From Salpingoeca rosetta (taxonomy: Eukaryota; Protista; Choanoflagellata): a stretch of 64,000 nucleotides of DNA. The stretch is taken from assembly GCA_033442325.1 (NCBI GenBank), contig JAWQFM010000027.1, positions 67,844 through 131,843 of the forward strand, written 5' to 3'. The stretch's first letter is position 1. The number at the start of each line of letters is the position of its first letter. A program made the position numbers and the translations under genes. A model generated the notes under the pieces. It was not told the DNA's origin, ran no database searches, and saw only the letters and a list, made by a program, of their open reading frames with translations. Shown here piece by piece: positions 27,695 through 36,108 of this stretch.

Positions 27695-27986
27695 GCCCCT
27701 GCTCGCCCCGGCAAGCGCCCTCCGCCTCCGCCCACGTCGTCGTCGTCGTCGACATCTGTACCGGTGACCATCGGCGCTCCCCAGCGGTCTGCATCCGTGG
27801 ACGCCGCATCCGTCGCAGGCAGCGCTGTCGGCGGTCTCGCAGGTACACGCACACGCGCACACGCACACACACACACACACACANNNNNNNNNNNNNNNNN
27901 NNNNNNNNNNNNNNNNNNNNNNNNNNNNNNNNNNNNNNNNNNNNNNNNNNNNNNNNNNNNNNNNNNNNNNNNNNNNNNNNNNNACA

Positions 27987-28085
<99 letters not shown>

Positions 28086-28556
28086 TCACGAACTCGCTTA
28101 CTCACTCGCTCGCCCACTCACCCACTCACCCCCTCGCCCGTACACGCTTTCCACGTCATTCGCCTCTCGGCAGGCATGGTCATCATCATTGCTTTGATTC
28201 TGCTGTTTGTGCGCCGCCGACGTAACTCAGCCAACGCAGGTCTGTCACCCCATGCACCTCATGTACCCATGTACCTCATGCACCTCCAAGTCCACCCCCA
28301 TCCCAGTTGGATCGATGTGTGGTTGTGTTCCCTTGTCTTTTTGGTGCCAATCACCTCAACGCCTCATCTATGTGCATATCCCAACACCGCCGCCCATCGC
28401 GGTTGCCTGCATATACGACAGCTGGCAAGAGCAAGGTGCCAGCCCCGCCATCACGTGGGGCGCAGCGACCGGCAAACCACGTCGGCCAATACATGGTCCC
28501 CGTCTCAAACATGTTCCTGCCAGACTACGAAGAGCCAGATGCCATCAGGTGTGTGT

Positions 28557-28588
<32 letters not shown>

Positions 28589-29668
28589 TTGTCTCTGTGT
28601 GTGTGTGTGTCTGTGTGTGTCTGTGTGTGTGTGTGTGTGTGTGTCTGTATGTCTGTGTCTGTCTCCCGTCGTTTGCTTTCTGTCCTTCTGTCTGTCTACG
28701 TTTGTCTTTTTGTTTCTGTTTGTGTGCCCGCGTCTGTCTGCCGTGTCAAGCCTCCCCCCCCCTTCCCCCGGTCCTGCTCACATGTCCCATTGTGGTGTTC
28801 GCTCGCCAGCCCAAACCGGGTGTACGAGCTGCCGATGCACACGGGAAAGACGGCGCCACCGGCCTACGCAACAGCAGCAGCAGTCAGCGTCGCCCGCACC
28901 AAGACCGCCCTGTACGACGTGGGCGATGGCGGCGATGGTCAGGCCATCTACGACAACGCTGTGGAGGAGGACGTGCAGGGCTTTGGGGTCCCACTCTACG
29001 ACAGGGCATCGCAACAACAGCCGCCGCAGAAGCAAACCCAGGGCGCACCGCTCTATGATGTCGCATCACAACAGCAGCAGCAGAACACGGCTCCGCTGTA
29101 TGACATTGCAACCACCGTGACGCCACAACAGCAGCACGAACAGCTGCGAGGGTTTGATGTCCCCTTGTACGATGTCGCTTCGCAACAGCAGCAGACGCAG
29201 CGGCGTGCAGGCGCGCTTGCTGTCGACGTGACGTACGACAACCCAACAGCCAAGTCCCTGGCCAACGTTGGCAATGATGAAGATGAGGAGGAGAAGGACG
29301 GTGCAAAGGCACGAGCCAACGCCCCCACCTACGATATGGCCTCACCAATGCCAGCGCACTATGCGGAGAACCCGCGCCACCGCGCCCTGCACCCATCGTA
29401 CGACGTGGCCACGTCCGAGACAGACGGCGGTGGCGACGACGACCTCTACGCCACAGCGGCTGACGTTGCGCACAGCGACAAGAACACGCACCAGCAAGCA
29501 GCGGCCACGGACAAGAACACGGACCCCGATGGTGGATATCTGATTACGTTCCCCTCCTCCTCGCAAACGCCCTCGCGGCAGCAGCGGCCGCCTACCCTGC
29601 CCACCTCCACCACGTACGACAACATTGGCGATGACGGCGAGGCGCTGTACTCTGCACCAACACTCTGA
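25092..29668 (+). CDS. Type I membrane receptor-like protein A: signal peptide, Cys-rich small exons, cupredoxin-like domain, Thr/Ala mucin stalk, TM, Tyr-rich cytoplasmic tail
   Basis: Signal MERASLFAVVLCALACRAALA. VGDTIRWT...H...SGKLPPGATFYYTFKEEGTFTY...GTVIV. TM VAGSAVGGLAG|MVIIIALILLFVRRRR. Tail has about 18 Tyr, 10 of them in YD motifs. Some internal exon boundaries are uncertain. Confidence 0.85.
26942..27420 (+). repeat. Coding 33-bp tandem repeat (~14.5 copies, TTSAAATTEAA); a separate (ACA)n poly-Thr tract follows at ~27600-27692
   Basis: Unit accaccagcgcagcagcaacaacagaagcagca is repeated nearly perfectly without spacers. Confidence 0.95.
27884..27983. other. Assembly gap (100 N) inside a (CA)n intron tract
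   Basis: Run of N. Confidence 1.
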
Positions 29669-30606: not shown

Positions 30607-31096
30607 ATGGCGGTGCTGCCGCTTGCCGCCATCCACGCGGTGACGCTGGTGGCAGTTGCGTCCTCGCTCTTGTTCGTGAGCCAGTTCCCGTACCACTGCA
30701 TTGCTGGCAGCCCAGGCATAGTACCAGGGTACCAGTCTCCACCAGATCTGACAGAGGCAGAGGTGACTGGCGTGCCCCTGGACTACCTCGACGCAAGCTT
30801 GGATGCGCCCGCGCCCCTCGTCAACTTCAAAGAGTTCTCTGAGGTGCATGTGTGTGTGCGTATGCGTGTGTGCGTATGCGTGTGTGCGCGTGAAAGTGCG
30901 CGTAGCTCCTGGTTTTCGTTGCCTGCAAGCACGCAAGAGCAATACAACCACACAAAAATTGCGAGCACAAGAGCTTGCTCCCTAACTCACTCTCTCACTC
31001 ACTCACTCACTCACACACACACACACACTCACACACACACACACACAGCTTGCTCACTAACTCACTCACTCACTCACTCACACACACACACACACA

Positions 31097-31153
<57 letters not shown>

Positions 31154-34100
31154 CCACACACACACACACACCTACACACCCACACACTCTCTCTCTCACA
31201 CACACACACACCTACCCACTCACACACACACGCTCTCTCTCTCTCTCGCACACACACTCACTCACACACGCTCACTCACTCATGCACACTCACCCACTCA
31301 CTCTCAATCTCACTACAGGAGTTTGCACTCGAAGTGCAGTTTGCGCAGCAAGAATACCAGCTCATGACACTCCGCACAGCCACAATGCTGCAGATGCTGG
31401 TGGCTTCCATTGAATTTGAGCTCCTGGTCAAGAACGGTTATGAGCCTCGCCCAGACACGCCCACCCAAGCGCCCGAGCTCAGGCACGTCGGGCGGGCCCT
31501 GGCCCTCGGCTCTGCAGACAAGCCCTCCTCAGCCAGCGCAGATGTCCTGGCCGAGATTGCAGAGTACGCTAGGGAGGTCGGGTTCGAGTTCATTTCCATC
31601 CCTGACAACATTGAGACAGACAACTACGTCTATGTCAGCACCGTGCAGGCAGACTGCCGCGACCACGCCGCAGACGTGCTCTTCATCTTGGACAGCAGCG
31701 GCGACGTTGACCAAGACTTCTCCCAACTTCGGTCGTACGCCGTGCAAACCGCCTCCCGCTTCGACATCAGCCCTTCCCAGACCCGCATCGCCTTCATGAC
31801 ATACGCAACCACGCCCTCGCGCCTGTACACGTTGAACGCTGCGGAATTCCTTTCCGCAGACGAGCTGTTGGCCCATGCTGCTACGGAGAACTTTCGAGGG
31901 GGTGAGTACGAGTGGAGCGCTGAGGCTGCTGCTCTGCGATGCTGCTTCATGGTGTCTGGGTGTGCTGTACCTCAGCTTTCTCCTTTTGTACACTATTCAA
32001 CCATCGTTTTCGTCTTTTGGCTGTGGCCGCGGCTGTCAGGTTGCAACGCGCACGCGACTACGCTCCAATCTTCTCTCACTTCCTCACCTTCCACGCACAC
32101 CCCTGACGGCCTTCAGGTTTCACCAACACCGGGGCGGCTCTGGCTGCTGCACGACAGGCGGTATTCGGCGAAAAATATGGAGTGAGTGTCATCTCGGATG
32201 TTCGGCGAGCTGTGAGCCCTGAGTTATTGCGGTGCGCGGTTGCGGTTGTTGTTACTGTTAGTGTGATGATGATGAACTTGCTGCAGGTTGAAGACGGAGG
32301 CAGGGTTGATTTGCGGTTGCTTGGTTGCAATCTCGCAGCAGCTACAGAGCAACGACTCACTCTCATTCATCACCCGCACACGCACACGCACACGCACACG
32401 CACACACGCGTGCAATGCAACACAGATGCGCCCTGCGTACCTGGGCATTCCCCGCATTGCAGTGCTGTTCGTGAGTCACTCGGCCCATGACAGCTTCATC
32501 GCGCCTGCACGCCAGCTCCGCGAGCACGGAGTCACCGTCATCGTTGTTGGTATGGCGATGCCCACTTGCGTCTTGGTCTTCGGCTTGCGTATTACCCTTT
32601 AGTGCACATGCAAGCTTGCAGTGCACCTACTTGTTCAGATGTCTGCCTGCCCCACGTTATCTTGCAGGTCATGAGTGCACCACCACGGCCTTCAGCTCTC
32701 TCTCTCCTTCTCTCTCTCTCTATGTCTCCCTGTCTGTCTTGCTTGCTTGATCTCTTGTTCTCTGTCTGTGGTTGAGAGAGGTTCTCACCAATCCTTCCAA
32801 CCACGTGTATGCACGTGTGACAACAGGGACGGGGAGTGTGTCGACGAACGAGATGGCGCTGATTGCCAGCGAACCCGTCAGCGAAAATGTCATCCGCATC
32901 GGCGACGTTCCAAAGTTTGTGGTGCTGCCCCAGTTGGTGGCGGCCACCATGTGCAGGCAGCCAGTCATTGTCGACACAGCCAATGCGGTGAGTAGCAGCA
33001 TGAGAGGCGGGGTTGCTTGTGTGGGGTTGTCCCTGTAGTGCTCTGTGTGTATGTGTGATCTGTGTGTATGTGTGATCTGTGTGTATGTGTGCTCTGTGTA
33101 CGTGCTTATGTGTGTGCTCTGTGTGTATATGTGTACGTGTGTGATCTGTGTATGTGTGTGTGTGTGTGTGTGCCTGACCGACTGTCTGCCTGACTGTCTG
33201 CCTGAGCTTGTGCGCATCACGTCGCGTTTGTTCCGTCATGGCTCATGTGCCTTGCACCATCGCCCACCACATCACAACACTGCCTTCCTTCTCATGGATG
33301 CTTCACGACACCAGGTGCTGGTCCGTGGTTTGCCACCACGGGCGTTTCGCTTCTACCGCCTCAATCCCATGTTCAAGCGGCTGCAGCGCATCAACTTCTT
33401 CATGGAAATGTTCAGCGGCCAGACGTGAGCCTATCGAGCGCGTGTCCACTCTGATGTCTTGGCCTTGTTACACTGCGTACCTTGCATGCACGCACGCACG
33501 CACATTCGCACAGATGCATGCCAGTAGATTCCCAAGCTCATTCACCGCACGCACACACAACACGCCACACACAACACGCTACACACAACACGCTACACAC
33601 CACACACACACACACACGCACACACACACACACTCACTGACGCTGCGTTCATACATACGCACCGTTTTACCAGGGACGTGTTTGTGTCGATGAACGGAAC
33701 GCTTGTTGGGCCATATCACCACGACATAGCGTACACGACACGCGAGACTGCCAAAGCGTTTTCCATTGCCAACTTCTCTTCATTTGATGCTGTCACGTTC
33801 GCTGTGCAGGGGCGCCCCACCTCGCTCATCACCGCTGCGTCGTTTCGCCTCAACCTCGTCAACGCCATGTTCACCGGTGGACCCGTACATGCGGTCTCGC
33901 TGCCCTTCACTGCTGCCCGTCCGGGAAAGACCGTGTCGCTACCTCCTTTGGAGGCGACAGGGGAGAGCGCGGTTGGCACAGCGGTGACGCTGCTGCTTCA
34001 GGGATTTGACAACACGACGTTCATTGTCACCGCAGGTGGACAGCGCGTGCGGCTGACACAGTACATCATGCTTGGGGACTCACACCGCACGCTCGTGCTG

Positions 34101-34689
34101 GGGCGGAACATGTCGGATCCACTTAACATTGGCGGTGTGCTGCTGCAGGTGATGAGCGCACAGATCACGACGATGACAACCACAGTGACAACCACAGTGA
34201 CAACCACAGTGACAACCACAGTGACAACCACCACCACCACCACAACGTCAGTCGCAACAACTACAACAACAACAACAACGACCACCACTTCGACTGTCGG
34301 GGGTCCAGCAACAGTGCCTTCAACTACGACTACGAGCGATACGCCGCTGCCACCCACCACGTCACCAGCACCGCCAATGCAGCAGGGGCCGCAGGGCACA
34401 ACCACAATCACAACCACAACCACAACCACAACCACAACCACAACCACAACAACGATGTTTACCACGACTACAACAACGACGACGGTATTCACCGCCACCA
34501 CAACTGCTGCCACCAGCACGACAACTACCACAAACGGAGCAAGGCATACAATCAACCCAACTACCGCCACTTTGCACGCCACAAGCGCAGCCATTACACC
34601 ATCAATCCCATTAACGACTGCCACAAGCACCACCGTCGCCACTACGACACCAAGTACCCCTGTGCCAAGTACAACAGCTACCCCATCAA

Positions 34690-34729
<40 letters not shown>

Positions 34730-35460
34730 GCCACTGTTTGCTGGTGGTCGGCAGTCATCATCGTCAGTGGATACAGCGACGGTTGCGGGCAGCGCTGCAG
34801 GCGGCTTTGCTGGTGCGTGAGTGAGAGAGAGAGAGAGTGTGTGTGTGTGTGTGAGTGTGGGGTTTTATTGGGGAAAACTCGCTGAAATCTTACACTGCTC
34901 CCAGCGCTCAGAGATGGGGAAGGCAATTGCGGCAAAACAAAAGGGCAGCGGTGTGTGTGTGTTCACACTTGTGTCGCTCATTGGCAACCCTCCTCTCGAG
35001 TACAGCAGCTGACATGTGTCGATCACCCCCCCCTCTCTTCTCTCCACTCCTATATTTGTGGGTCACTAAGAATCGGGTTCGGATGTTACCACAGACAATA
35101 TGCAGTGCAAAGAAACGCTTACAGCACAAAGGTCGCGCAGAACGCGCGAGTCTTACTCCGAATGTAATATACGTATCTGGGTACATTAAAGCCGCTTATG
35201 CACGCAAGATCAGCCTGTGGGTACGATATGCGGAGTAAATAAGTGGATAGGAATCCACTATATTTCGAATAACAGTCCATGGGGGAGTCGATAGAGAGAT
35301 GTGCGAGGTGATTGTGGTGCCGTCCCGCAAAACCTTATCTGCTATTTAGAGTACTTACATGGACATCCATTGCTATCTCGTATAACTAGCGCCCTTGCCG
35401 CTCGGACGTCGGTGCTGCCCTCCGGCCTTGATAAATATTCCAATTTGTTACGTTCGTCGT

Positions 35461-35535
<75 letters not shown>

Positions 35536-36108
35536 ACGGATGTGCGTCATTTGTTCGTCATTTCCTCTCCACCTCTTGCCATCCCCCACTCCTCACCCCC
35601 ACACTCCTTTTTATCCCCCACCTACACCCACATCACATATATGCGTTCTCTGTCATGGCGGCCACGCAGGGACGGTGTGGAGTATGAGGTACCGCGATCA
35701 TTTGGACACGTGACAGGGGCCGTGCAGATGGGTGAGCCCGTGAAGATCAACCACACACGCGCTGTCATGTATGACATAGGCAATGACGGCAGCCCAAACT
35801 ACGACATGCCCTCCTCATTGCAAACAACACACGCGCCAACAGCAGCAGCAGCAGCGAGGAAAACAGCCCACGGCGTACGCATGGCCATGCTTCAGGATGT
35901 TGGCGAATCGGGGACCGACACCACCACAGCTGCCACTGCCGGCAACGGCAGGCCCACATATGAGGAGGTGGGCGTCACCGAGACGGCAAATGATAATGAG
36001 GAGGTGTTGGGCTTTGCTTCGCTGTCCACAACAAGCACAACGGCACCCAGCTCAACCGGTTATGACAACATTGGTGACGATGGACAAGTGGTGTACGCTT
36101 CACCGTAG
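30607..36108 (+). CDS. Receptor-like protein B: signal peptide, VWA domain, beta-rich region, Thr-rich stalk, Tyr-motif tail. The TM exon could not be found (see findings)
   Basis: ADVLFILDSSGDV...SRFDISPSQTRIAFMTY...GFTNTGAALAAARQAVF...PRIAVLF...LREHGVTVIVVG...EMALIASEP is a VWA pattern. Stalk ends SVDTATVAGSAAGGFAG. Last exon 35670-36108 ends GYDNIGDDGQVVYASP*. Confidence 0.8.
35051..35460. other. Compositionally anomalous ~410 bp block of unknown origin interrupting receptor B
   Basis: About 47% GC and ~35 TpA dinucleotides (hand count), no microsatellites, and no credible exon. Unlike the surrounding TpA-poor sequence. Confidence 0.65.

What the first reader, a model, noticed from the sequence alone, without database searches (positions are those of the whole stretch)
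29615..29668. Conserved C-terminal dual-tyrosine motif with ITAM spacing: YDNI-x7-YxxP (second copy at 36061-36108)
Seen: receptor A ends YDNIGDDGEALYSAPTL* and receptor B ends YDNIGDDGQVVYASP*. The YDNIGDDG peptide is identical despite synonymous codon differences (tac/tat, ggc/ggt, gat/gac), which implies protein-level selection. Known: an ITAM is YxxL/I-x6-8-YxxL/I and binds tandem-SH2 proteins (Syk/ZAP70); YxxP is preferred by Crk/Abl/Nck-type SH2 domains. Inference: this is a proto-ITAM-like bidentate docking site in a unicellular holozoan. The second half deviates from the ITAM consensus.
Basis: partly seen in the sequence, partly recalled or inferred. Interest (0 to 1): 0.75.

Follow-up and report, generated by a model that had tools for sequence, protein, structure and literature searches.

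The report
Conserved two-tyrosine tail end, not ITAM
Three enzyme-free surface proteins of the choanoflagellate Salpingoeca rosetta end in the same 15-residue two-tyrosine motif, which looks like a docking site for phosphotyrosine-reading adaptors (a Grb2-type site followed by an Abl/Crk-type site) rather than a forerunner of the immune-receptor ITAM.

Summary
Both tails end as stated. The eight-residue core YDNIGDDG is identical, yet 5 of its 8 codons differ synonymously. The genome is Salpingoeca rosetta, and tail A is PTSG_13003.

I found a third copy on another contig, in PTSG_10716, which ends ...YDNMGDDGDVLYAAPMRPKR. All three have the form Y-D-N-[I/M]-G-D-D-G-x-x-[L/V]-Y-[A/S]-[A/S]-P, with 11 residues from Tyr to Tyr, within 5 residues of the C-terminus. 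It is the best conserved block of otherwise unalignable, Tyr-rich tails. The tails of A and C follow a membrane helix and are cytoplasmic.

The ITAM reading fails on its second half: YxxP is invariant where ITAM needs YxxL/I. No canonical ITAM occurs in any tail. I saw no Syk-type gene with two SH2 domains and a kinase.

- **First tyrosine:** pY-x-N, the Grb2 SH2 consensus. S. rosetta has a GRB2 orthologue that keeps the specificity Trp.
- **Second tyrosine:** [L/V]-Y-x-x-P, the Abl substrate and Crk/Abl SH2 consensus.

Bidentate reading by a tandem-SH2 protein is not excluded, because an SHP-like phosphatase and PLCγ are present. Phosphorylation is untested, and I found no relatives outside this species. 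Kinase-less Tyr-motif membrane scaffolds in S. rosetta are already published (YxxP arrays), and this scan has noted several others.

The parts
29615..29668 (+). C-terminal motif of protein A (PTSG_13003): YDNIGDDGEALYSAP, then TL and the stop
36061..36108 (+). C-terminal motif of protein B (776-aa VWA model): YDNIGDDGQVVYASP, then the stop
28810..29668 (+). Last exon of A: a Tyr-rich cytoplasmic tail with 16 Tyr, mostly Y-D-x-A/N contexts; 3 are YxN and 3 are YxxP
   Evidence: the splice junction is taken from the annotated protein P0001
29531..29554 (+). GGYLITFP block of A, shared with protein C (GGYIETFP) about 25-35 residues upstream of the terminal motif
28913..28960 (+). Membrane-proximal look-alike unit in A: YDVGDGGDGQAIYDNA (Tyr to Tyr 12 residues)
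28176..28238 (+). Exon of A carrying the second half of the membrane helix and the stop-transfer signal (VIIIALILLFV-RRRR)
28421..28546 (+). Juxtamembrane exon of A (AGKSKV...YEEPDAI)
35670..36108 (+). Last exon of B: tail with 6 Tyr (YEVP, YDIG, YDMP, YEEV, YDNI, YASP)
35770..35811 (+). Membrane-proximal look-alike unit in B: YDIGNDGSPNYDMP (Tyr to Tyr 10 residues)

Best explanation
The motif Y-D-N-[I/M]-G-D-D-G-x-x-[L/V]-Y-[A/S]-[A/S]-P is a conserved short linear motif. It sits at the extreme C-terminus of a small, so far S. rosetta-only family of single-pass surface proteins that have no kinase domain. The members are A (PTSG_13003), B (the adjacent VWA protein) and C (PTSG_10716). They carry different ectodomains on a shared chassis of membrane helix and Tyr-rich tail. 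I read the motif as a composite phosphotyrosine docking site made of two different half-sites. Tyr-1 (pY-D-N-I/M) fits the pY-x-N rule of the Grb2 SH2 domain. Tyr-2 ([L/V]-Y-[A/S]-[A/S]-P) fits the Abl-kinase substrate consensus and, once phosphorylated, the pY-x-x-P rule of Crk/Abl/Nck-type SH2 domains. On this reading the proteins work like LAT- or Cas-type membrane scaffolds. A cytoplasmic tyrosine kinase phosphorylates the tail, and SH2 adaptors then assemble on it. Shown: the conservation, the topology of A and C, and the presence of matching readers in the genome. Inferred: phosphorylation, the identity of the readers, and any cooperation between the two sites.
For: Selection: the core is identical or near-identical in three paralogues while synonymous sites are scrambled and the rest of the tails is unalignable. 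BLASTP finds only these blocks: A-B E 2e-5, C-B E 2e-5, C-A E 9e-7. Scans that did not require the second Tyr still returned A, B and C, all with the same spacing.

Topology: in A and C the tail follows a hydrophobic helix and an RRRR/RRRN stop-transfer signal. C also has a signal peptide.

Tyr-1: Asn at +2 is invariant. C carries 11 YxN sites (YDN[STAQM]) in its tail and A carries 3. S. rosetta encodes an SH3-SH2-SH3 GRB2 orthologue. Over 36 residues its SH2 is about 83% identical to human GRB2 105-140, including the Trp of KYFLW, human W121. It is established knowledge that this Trp imposes pYxN selectivity. Grb2 and Shp2 homologues in Salpingoeca are also reported in PMC7260276.

Tyr-2: EALYSAP, QVVYASP and DVLYAAP compare with abltide EAIYAAP and the Abl consensus I/V/L-Y-x-x-P/F (PMC4532999). 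A choanoflagellate Abl (MbAbl2) prefers that peptide (PMC4474922). Abl-family kinases are present in choanoflagellates (PMC4342544). A choanoflagellate Crk SH2 binds pYxxP peptides, including pYDVP from S. rosetta membrane proteins (PMC5043372).

Capacity: the genome holds at least 92 SH2 and at least 160 tyrosine-kinase matches.
Against: There is no evidence that any of these tyrosines is phosphorylated. The one S. rosetta kinase-inhibitor paper I checked does not list these proteins in its two supplementary files that are held as text. I found no orthologue outside S. rosetta, so conservation rests on three paralogues. The invariant GDDG spacer is not explained by SH2 or kinase consensus rules. 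For B I could not find the exon for the second half of the membrane helix, so the cytoplasmic location of its tail is unproven. I did not identify the S. rosetta Abl orthologue (searches were not decisive). YDN[I/M] also fits the YxxPhi sorting-signal pattern.
Confidence: 0.5

Rival explanations
1. Bidentate site. Both tyrosines are phosphorylated, and one protein with two adjacent SH2 domains reads them together. The fixed 11-residue distance is then the selected feature. Candidate readers in this genome are the SHP-like phosphatase, PLCgamma, or one of the many other proteins with two or three SH2 domains.
For: The Tyr-to-Tyr distance is identical in all three paralogues, including in scans that did not demand it. 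Proteins with two adjacent SH2 domains are abundant. They include PLCgamma and an SHP2/SHP1-like gene with two SH2 domains and a phosphatase domain at C6:484-488 kb. There are also membrane proteins with two SH2 domains and several further such loci. Closely spaced pTyr pairs give the highest avidity in modelling (PMC12132298). Among YDN[LIVM]-x5-9-YxxP matches in real Tyr-rich tails outside the family, x7 occurs 3 times against once each for x6 and x8.
Against: The two half-sites differ and each matches a different single-SH2 specificity. Neither matches SHP-type or ITAM-type preferences well, since Pro at +3 is atypical for both. I saw no Syk/ZAP-70-type gene joining two SH2 domains to a kinase. 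With only three related sequences, constant spacing could simply be inherited. The membrane-proximal look-alike units have variable Tyr-to-Tyr distances: 12, 10 and 20. A similar YDNVGDD...YAFP stretch in a multi-SH3 adaptor has a different spacing. The genome-wide excess is weak: 12 matches against 7 for the control pattern.
Confidence: 0.15
2. Trafficking signal. YDN[I/M] acts unphosphorylated as a YxxPhi motif for clathrin-adaptor mu subunits. The acidic GDDG stretch assists sorting or ER export, and the second tyrosine is incidental or part of the same signal.
For: YDNI/YDNM fits YxxPhi. In A it is the only YxxPhi in the tail. The motif sits in the cytosolic tail of type I membrane proteins and is followed by acidic residues. 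Dual use of one tyrosine motif for AP-2 and SH2 binding is known (CTLA-4 YVKM, from general knowledge).
Against: YxxPhi does not constrain +1 or +2, yet D and N are invariant. It does not explain the invariant [L/V]-Y-x-x-P either. Classical YxxPhi signals lie roughly 6-40 residues from the membrane (general knowledge), whereas here the distance is at least 120 residues in B and more than 300 in A and C. The surrounding tails are packed with further tyrosines in acidic, kinase-substrate-like contexts.
Confidence: 0.15
3. True proto-ITAM: homologous to, or a functional precursor of, the animal ITAM, read by a Syk/Shark-like kinase.
For: The first half is YxxI in A and B and the spacer is 7 residues. 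A Syk-like kinase domain is reported in Monosiga, although in a Jak-like architecture (PMC4342544).
Against: The second half is never YxxL/I and C has YDNM. No locus joining two SH2 domains to a kinase was seen. No relatives were found outside one species, so there is no continuity towards animals.
Confidence: 0.03
4. No function: the block is a leftover of recent duplication or gene conversion between neighbouring genes.
For: A and B are adjacent tandem paralogues.
Against: Five of the eight core codons differ synonymously between A and B with no replacement. A third copy lies on another contig with yet other codons. Everything around the block has diverged beyond alignment.
Confidence: 0.03

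Closest known systems
Pre-metazoan transmembrane proteins with cytosolic YxxP arrays (S. rosetta PTSG_05573, PTSG_12435, PTSG_12436; Shigeno-Nakazawa et al. 2016, PMC5043372)
   Same: Same organism. They are single-pass membrane proteins without a kinase domain, with arrays of Tyr motifs in a disordered cytosolic tail, proposed as SH2 (Crk) docking platforms. They have no orthologues detectable outside the species.
   Different: Those proteins carry YDVP-type YxxP arrays, and some have their own C-terminal SH2 domains. Here the arrays are mostly YD-x-A or YDN (Grb2-type), and the three proteins share a fixed bipartite C-terminal motif. These proteins are not named in that paper's text or in its one supplementary file held as text. 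Sequence relatedness to them was not tested.
Animal transmembrane or membrane-anchored adaptors with multiple pYxN sites (LAT, Shc, FRS2, Gab)
   Same: No enzyme domain and several YxN sites that would recruit Grb2. C has 11 of them, and the Grb2 reader is conserved in the genome.
   Different: No sequence homology. These proteins have large ectodomains (cupredoxin-like, VWA, Cys-rich/PPC-like) and mucin stalks, whereas LAT has almost no ectodomain. Function is untested.
ITAM (YxxL/I-x6-8-YxxL/I) of immune receptor chains
   Same: Two tyrosines 11 residues apart in a cytoplasmic tail. The first half is YxxI in two of three copies.
   Different: The second half is an invariant YxxP. No Syk/ZAP-70-type reader was seen, and the family is confined to one choanoflagellate.
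Abl optimal substrate (abltide EAIYAAPFAKKK) and p130Cas/BCAR1 YxxP substrate-domain sites
   Same: The second half-site ([L/V]-Y-[A/S]-[A/S]-P; EALYSAP in A) matches the I/V/L-Y-x-x-P consensus (PMC4532999) that a choanoflagellate Abl also prefers (PMC4474922).
   Different: Here it is a single terminal site coupled to a YxN site, not an array. Phosphorylation is not shown.

Membership tests
ITAM | Two half-sites, both YxxL/I | tested here: not met
   The first half is YDNI in A and B and YDNM in C. The second half is YSAP, YASP or YAAP in all three. Regex scans for canonical and loose ITAMs gave 0 hits in all three tails.
ITAM | Spacer of 6-8 residues between the half-sites | tested here: met
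   Seven residues (GDDGxxx) in A, B and C.
ITAM | Located in the cytoplasmic tail of a membrane signalling chain | tested here: met
   In A and C the motif follows a membrane helix and an RRRR/RRRN signal. For B the exon for the second half of the helix was not found, so B is unresolved.
ITAM | A Syk/ZAP-70/Shark-type kinase with two SH2 domains in the same organism as reader | tested here: inconclusive
   No locus with two SH2 matches upstream of a tyrosine-kinase match turned up among 92 SH2 and 160 TK matches. Five further loci with two SH2 matches had no kinase signature within about 8 kb. Only 122 of 803 TK candidates were scored, so absence is not proven.
Grb2-SH2 ligand (pY-x-N) | Asn at +2 of the tyrosine | tested here: met
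   YDN is invariant in A, B and C. There are 11 further or total YxN sites in C's tail and 3 in A's.
Grb2-SH2 ligand (pY-x-N) | A Grb2 reader with the EF-loop Trp in the same genome | tested here: met
   An SH3-SH2-SH3 gene lies at G000:C10 around 762-764 kb. Its SH2 exon aligns with human GRB2 105-140 at E 1e-15 and contains KYFLW.
Grb2-SH2 ligand (pY-x-N) | Phosphorylation-dependent binding | not testable with these tools
   Needs peptide binding or pull-down experiments.
Abl substrate / Crk-Abl-Nck SH2 ligand ([I/V/L]-Y-x-x-P) | Aliphatic residue at -1 and Pro at +3 | tested here: met
   LYSAP, VYASP and LYAAP. The consensus comes from PMC4532999, and the choanoflagellate Abl preference from PMC4474922.
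Abl substrate / Crk-Abl-Nck SH2 ligand ([I/V/L]-Y-x-x-P) | An Abl-family kinase and a Crk adaptor in S. rosetta | tested here: inconclusive
   Two kinase loci next to an SH2 match were compared with solved structures without a clear Abl assignment. The literature reports Abl and Crk in choanoflagellates (PMC4342544, PMC4474922, PMC5043372).
YxxPhi clathrin-adaptor sorting signal | Y-x-x-bulky hydrophobic residue | tested here: met
   YDNI and YDNM.
YxxPhi clathrin-adaptor sorting signal | Typical distance from the membrane, roughly 6-40 residues (general knowledge) | tested here: not met
   The motif starts more than 300 residues after the membrane helix in A and C, and at least 120 residues into the last exon in B.
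Kinase-less transmembrane Tyr-motif scaffolds of choanoflagellates (PMC5043372) | Single-pass membrane protein with a disordered cytosolic tail carrying multiple SH2-type Tyr motifs and no catalytic domain | tested here: met
   A has 18 Tyr in 329 tail residues and C has 19 in 348. Neither model has precomputed Pfam domains.

The most novel reading that the evidence does not exclude
The fixed-geometry pair pY-D-N-Phi / x7 / pY-x-x-P could be a bidentate code invented independently in choanoflagellates. A protein with two adjacent SH2 domains, such as the SHP-like phosphatase or PLCgamma, would read it. That would make it a pre-animal analogue, not a homologue, of ITAM/BTAM logic, shared by receptors with unrelated ectodomains.
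Probability: 0.12. Interest if true: 0.7.

Novelty: new member of a known kind. Interest (0 to 1): 0.35.

Why it matters
Choanoflagellates have a very large phosphotyrosine toolkit, but almost no receptor-to-adaptor connection in them has been mapped. This work yields a short, sharply defined and selectively maintained peptide carried by three receptors with different ectodomains. Each half matches a reader or writer whose specificity is already known to be conserved in choanoflagellates: Grb2 with its specificity Trp, an Abl with abltide preference, and a Crk SH2 that binds pYxxP. That gives a cheap, concrete test of pre-animal wiring from receptor to Grb2 and Crk, using two peptides and a few recombinant SH2 domains. 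It does not bear on the origin of immune ITAM signalling.

Tried and rejected
**Relatives outside S. rosetta.**
- A word search with tail B was blank.
- A full HMMER scan of 1.84 billion representatives with tail A returned only itself.
- A search restricted to the last 60 residues of PTSG_13003 returned only itself.
- A search with the ectodomain of C returned only itself.
- The length window of the word-based tool, and the likely absence of choanoflagellate transcriptomes from these libraries, limit what these blanks mean.

**More family members in the genome.**
- Protein searches with the three tails found only A and B hitting each other; C found nothing real. The weak hits L018 and L019 are poly-Asp artefacts.
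- The GGY-x-x-TFP pattern gave only A, C and one non-coding chance hit.
- RDNIGDDG (C3) and YDDIDDDG (C15) are chance matches in unrelated contexts.
- YDNDGDD (C13, C35) are acidic low-complexity stretches.

**Phosphorylation evidence.** The S. rosetta kinase-inhibitor paper has no entry for these proteins in its held supplements.

**Readers and writers.**
- An SH3-SH2-SH3 gene on C14 was first taken for Grb2 and rejected. Its SH2 is closest to the C-terminal SH2 of PLCgamma and lacks the Trp.
- Identifying the S. rosetta Abl by comparing two SH2-linked kinase loci with solved structures was not decisive.

**Protein B.**
- The 75-83 nt repeat in B's intron is not a tRNA and matches no Rfam family.
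Whether its 776-aa annotated model contains a membrane helix therefore stays open.

**Other motifs.** The PDZ-ligand reading of A's ending (-PTL) and the SH3-ligand reading of C's ending (PMRPKR) were set aside because neither is shared by the other copies.

Full report
**1. The observation.** Window 29615-29668 reads YDNIGDDGEALYSAPTL-stop and 36061-36108 reads YDNIGDDGQVVYASP-stop. In the eight-codon core, A and B differ at five codons, all synonymously. Over the 15 codons up to the Pro there are 6 synonymous and 5 replacement differences, and the replacements are confined to the x positions. In 2000 composition-preserving shuffles of the two tails, no shared identical run of 7 or more residues occurred; the observed run is 8. 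The back-translated pattern has 2 matches in the window against 0 in 100 shuffles, and the exact pattern has only these 2 in the whole 55 Mb assembly. At DNA level the only non-repeat similarity between the tail exons is this block, 72.9% over 59 nt.

**2. Organism and genes.** A HMMER scan of 1.84 billion representatives with A's last exon returned one protein, identical to the query. It is the hypothetical protein PTSG_13003 of Salpingoeca rosetta (EGD79850.1, XP_004988471.1, F2UQE5), 349 aa, on GL832989.1.
- **A.** The model starts at the exon VIIIALILLFV-RRRR because a 100-N scaffold gap (27884-27983) lies in the intron that splits the membrane helix. The upstream signal peptide, small ectodomain and mucin exon are annotated as a separate 386-aa gene.
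- **B.** This is a 776-aa model (window 30607-36108) with a VWA domain.
- **What A and B share.** Both have a Thr/Ser mucin stalk and the juxtamembrane stretch SVD(A/T)A(S/T)VAGSA.GG.AG, which ends at a splice donor.

B was analysed exon by exon. For A and C, I used the database proteins P0001 and P0002.

**3. A third copy.** Allowing two mismatches in the DNA pattern gave a hit on another contig, G000:C35:317097, reading YDNMGDDG. It is the C-terminus of PTSG_10716 (P0002, 2084 aa). That protein has:
- a signal peptide and a large Cys-rich, acidic-repeat ectodomain;
- a membrane helix that the same kind of intron splits (…IVGAAAG | GVLLIACVVGFVVY), followed by RRRN;
- a 348-residue tail ending …GGYIETFPASS…LVYDNMGDDGDVLYAAPMRPKR.

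C also shares the block GGY(L/I)xTFP(S/A)SS with A (BLASTP E 9e-7; alignment A1). The family consensus is Y-D-N-[I/M]-G-D-D-G-x-x-[L/V]-Y-[A/S]-[A/S]-P. The Tyr-to-Tyr distance is 11 residues in all three, and the Pro is 0, 2 or 5 residues from the C-terminus. Two scans that did not require the second tyrosine still recovered exactly A, B and C among membrane-protein tails, so the constant spacing is not an artefact of the query. GDDG-x3-Y-x-x-P occurs only in these three, against 3 matches for the control pattern.

**4. The tails.** A has 18 Tyr in 329 tail residues, B has 6 in 143 and C has 19 in 348.
- Most tyrosines are followed by Asp. A has YD(V/I/R/M)A repeats. C has an 11-residue tandem repeat, VYDNSTAGGAV.
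- YxN sites: 3 in A, 1 in B, 11 in C.
- YxxP sites: 5, 3 and 2.
- No canonical or loosened ITAM exists in any tail.
- A membrane-proximal look-alike unit (YDVGDGGDGQAIYDNA in A, YDIGNDGSPNYDMP in B, YDIGG…VYAEA in C) has variable Tyr-to-Tyr distances. Only the terminal unit is fixed.

**5. Readers and writers in the same genome.** The assembly holds at least 92 SH2 and at least 160 tyrosine-kinase matches.
- **GRB2 orthologue.** It lies at G000:C10 around 762-764 kb, with SH3-SH2-SH3 exons. Over 36 residues its SH2 is about 83% identical to human GRB2 residues 105-140 (E 1e-15) and keeps the Trp of KYFLW. Established structural work on Grb2 shows that this Trp forces the pY-x-N turn.
- **Proteins with two adjacent SH2 domains.** These include a PLCgamma and an SHP2/SHP1-like gene with two SH2 domains and a phosphatase domain. 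There are also membrane proteins with two C-terminal SH2 domains and several more loci with two or three SH2 domains.
- **No Syk-type gene.** I found no locus joining two SH2 domains to a tyrosine-kinase domain. Not all kinase candidates were scored, so this is not proof of absence.
- **Literature.**
  - Grb2 and Shp2 homologues occur in Salpingoeca (PMC7260276).
  - Src, Csk, Tec and Abl families occur in choanoflagellates, and a Syk-like kinase domain in Monosiga sits in a Jak-like architecture (PMC4342544).
  - Monosiga Abl2 prefers the Abl peptide EAIYAAPFAKKKG (PMC4474922).
  - The Abl consensus is I/V/L-Y-x-x-P/F (PMC4532999).
  - Monosiga Crk SH2 binds pYxxP, including pYDVP peptides from S. 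rosetta membrane proteins (PMC5043372).

**6. Interpretation.** Every invariant position except GDDG is accounted for by two separate, well-known specificities. Y-D-N-Phi is a Grb2-type pYxN site. [L/V]-Y-[A/S]-[A/S]-P is an Abl-type substrate and a Crk/Abl/Nck-type pYxxP site; A's EALYSAP differs from abltide's EAIYAAP at two positions. I therefore read the motif as a composite docking site at the end of LAT/Cas-like, kinase-less membrane scaffolds, with confidence about 0.5.

Spacing alone is not diagnostic, however (PMC12132298), and three paralogues are too few to tell constraint from inheritance. Homology with the ITAM is very unlikely. A YxxPhi sorting role (about 0.15) fits the first half only. 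It does not explain D, N or the second half, and the site lies far from the membrane.

**7. Wider context in the genome.** YDN[LIVM]-x5-9-YxxP gives 12 matches against 7 for the control pattern. The real ones, apart from A, B and C, lie in other Tyr-rich tails:
- two units in a C13 gene that also has YDMGDD repeats;
- one in a C16 protein with a mucin stalk, membrane helix, RRRR and tail (YDNV…YDVP);
- one each on C18 and C22.

A multi-SH3 adaptor on C7 has LYDNVGDDEELEDMYEQLYAFP. The half-sites, and even the YDN-Phi-GDD wording, therefore recur beyond the family. This fits a general kinase/SH2 grammar rather than a unique receptor code.

**8. Novelty.** Kinase-less membrane proteins with Tyr-motif arrays in S. 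rosetta are published, for YxxP arrays (PMC5043372). This scan's own notes list several further examples on other DNA of this genome; those are unchecked AI notes. PTSG_13003 and PTSG_10716 are not named in any searchable paper. What is new is modest: a three-member family defined by a fixed composite C-terminal motif, YDN arrays that point to Grb2 rather than Crk, and a specific experiment that follows from them.

**9. Caveats.**
- Nothing here shows phosphorylation.
- Conservation rests on paralogues of one species.
- B lacks a detectable exon for the second half of its membrane helix. Between 34820 and 35669 there is instead a dispersed 75-83 nt repeat and unique sequence, so B may be misassembled, differently spliced or decaying.
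- The GDDG spacer is unexplained.

Noticed in passing
window 34880-34962: A 75-83 nt dispersed repeat with at least 40 copies at 86-99% identity across the genome. It sits in the intron of gene B where the membrane-helix exon would be expected. It is not a tRNA and matches no Rfam family.
   Followed up: partly
window 34820-35669: Gene B has no recognisable exon equivalent to A's exon for the second half of the membrane helix and the RRRR signal. The B exon ends ...SAAGGFAG at a GT donor, and the next recognisable coding sequence is the tail exon. Misassembly, a different splice or gene decay cannot be told apart here.
   Followed up: partly
window 27884-27983: A 100-N scaffold gap lies inside the intron that splits A's membrane helix. 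As a result, the public annotation cuts one receptor gene into two models (386 aa, and PTSG_13003 at 349 aa).
   Followed up: yes
L030:7040-7230 (G000:C35, PTSG_10716 tail): An 11-residue tandem repeat, VYDNSTAGGAV, gives about six YDN sites exactly 11 residues apart. This is the same Tyr-to-Tyr distance as in the terminal motif. It may be coincidence or a shared constraint.
   Followed up: no
L024 (G000:C7:1395120): A long cytoplasmic multi-SH3 adaptor carries LYDNVGDDEELEDMYEQLYAFP between two SH3 domains. The wording is the same as the receptor motif, but the spacing differs and there is an extra YEQL.
   Followed up: no
L033/L034 (G000:C13:1230890-1231323): A gene with YDMGDD repeated three times, then YDNV-x7-YEEP, and 130 residues further on YDNV-x7-YDMP. 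This is another carrier of the YD-Phi-GDD / YxxP grammar.
   Followed up: no
L035 (G000:C16:1212423): A protein with a poly-Thr mucin stalk, membrane helix, RRRR and tail. It has many GY(A/G/Q)DV sites, YDNV-x7-YDVP, YDNP twice and YDLP. It is another kinase-less Tyr-motif receptor.
   Followed up: no
L053 (G000:C10:761271-764291): A clear GRB2 orthologue (SH3-SH2-SH3 in six small exons) with the specificity Trp conserved.
   Followed up: yes
G000:C22:970832-974657 (minus strand): The SH2, phosphatase and SH2 matches lie in the order SH2-PTP-SH2. This would be an unusual arrangement if it is one gene.
   Followed up: no
L009:3282-7979 (G000:C23, minus strand): A single 1565-aa open frame with four TNFR Cys-rich repeats, a membrane segment and two C-terminal SH2 domains. 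It resembles the SH2-bearing membrane proteins described in PMC5043372.
   Followed up: no
L046 (G000:C14:1456500-1460000): A second SH3-SH2-SH3 adaptor. Its SH2 is closest to the C-terminal SH2 of PLCgamma and lacks the Grb2 Trp.
   Followed up: partly
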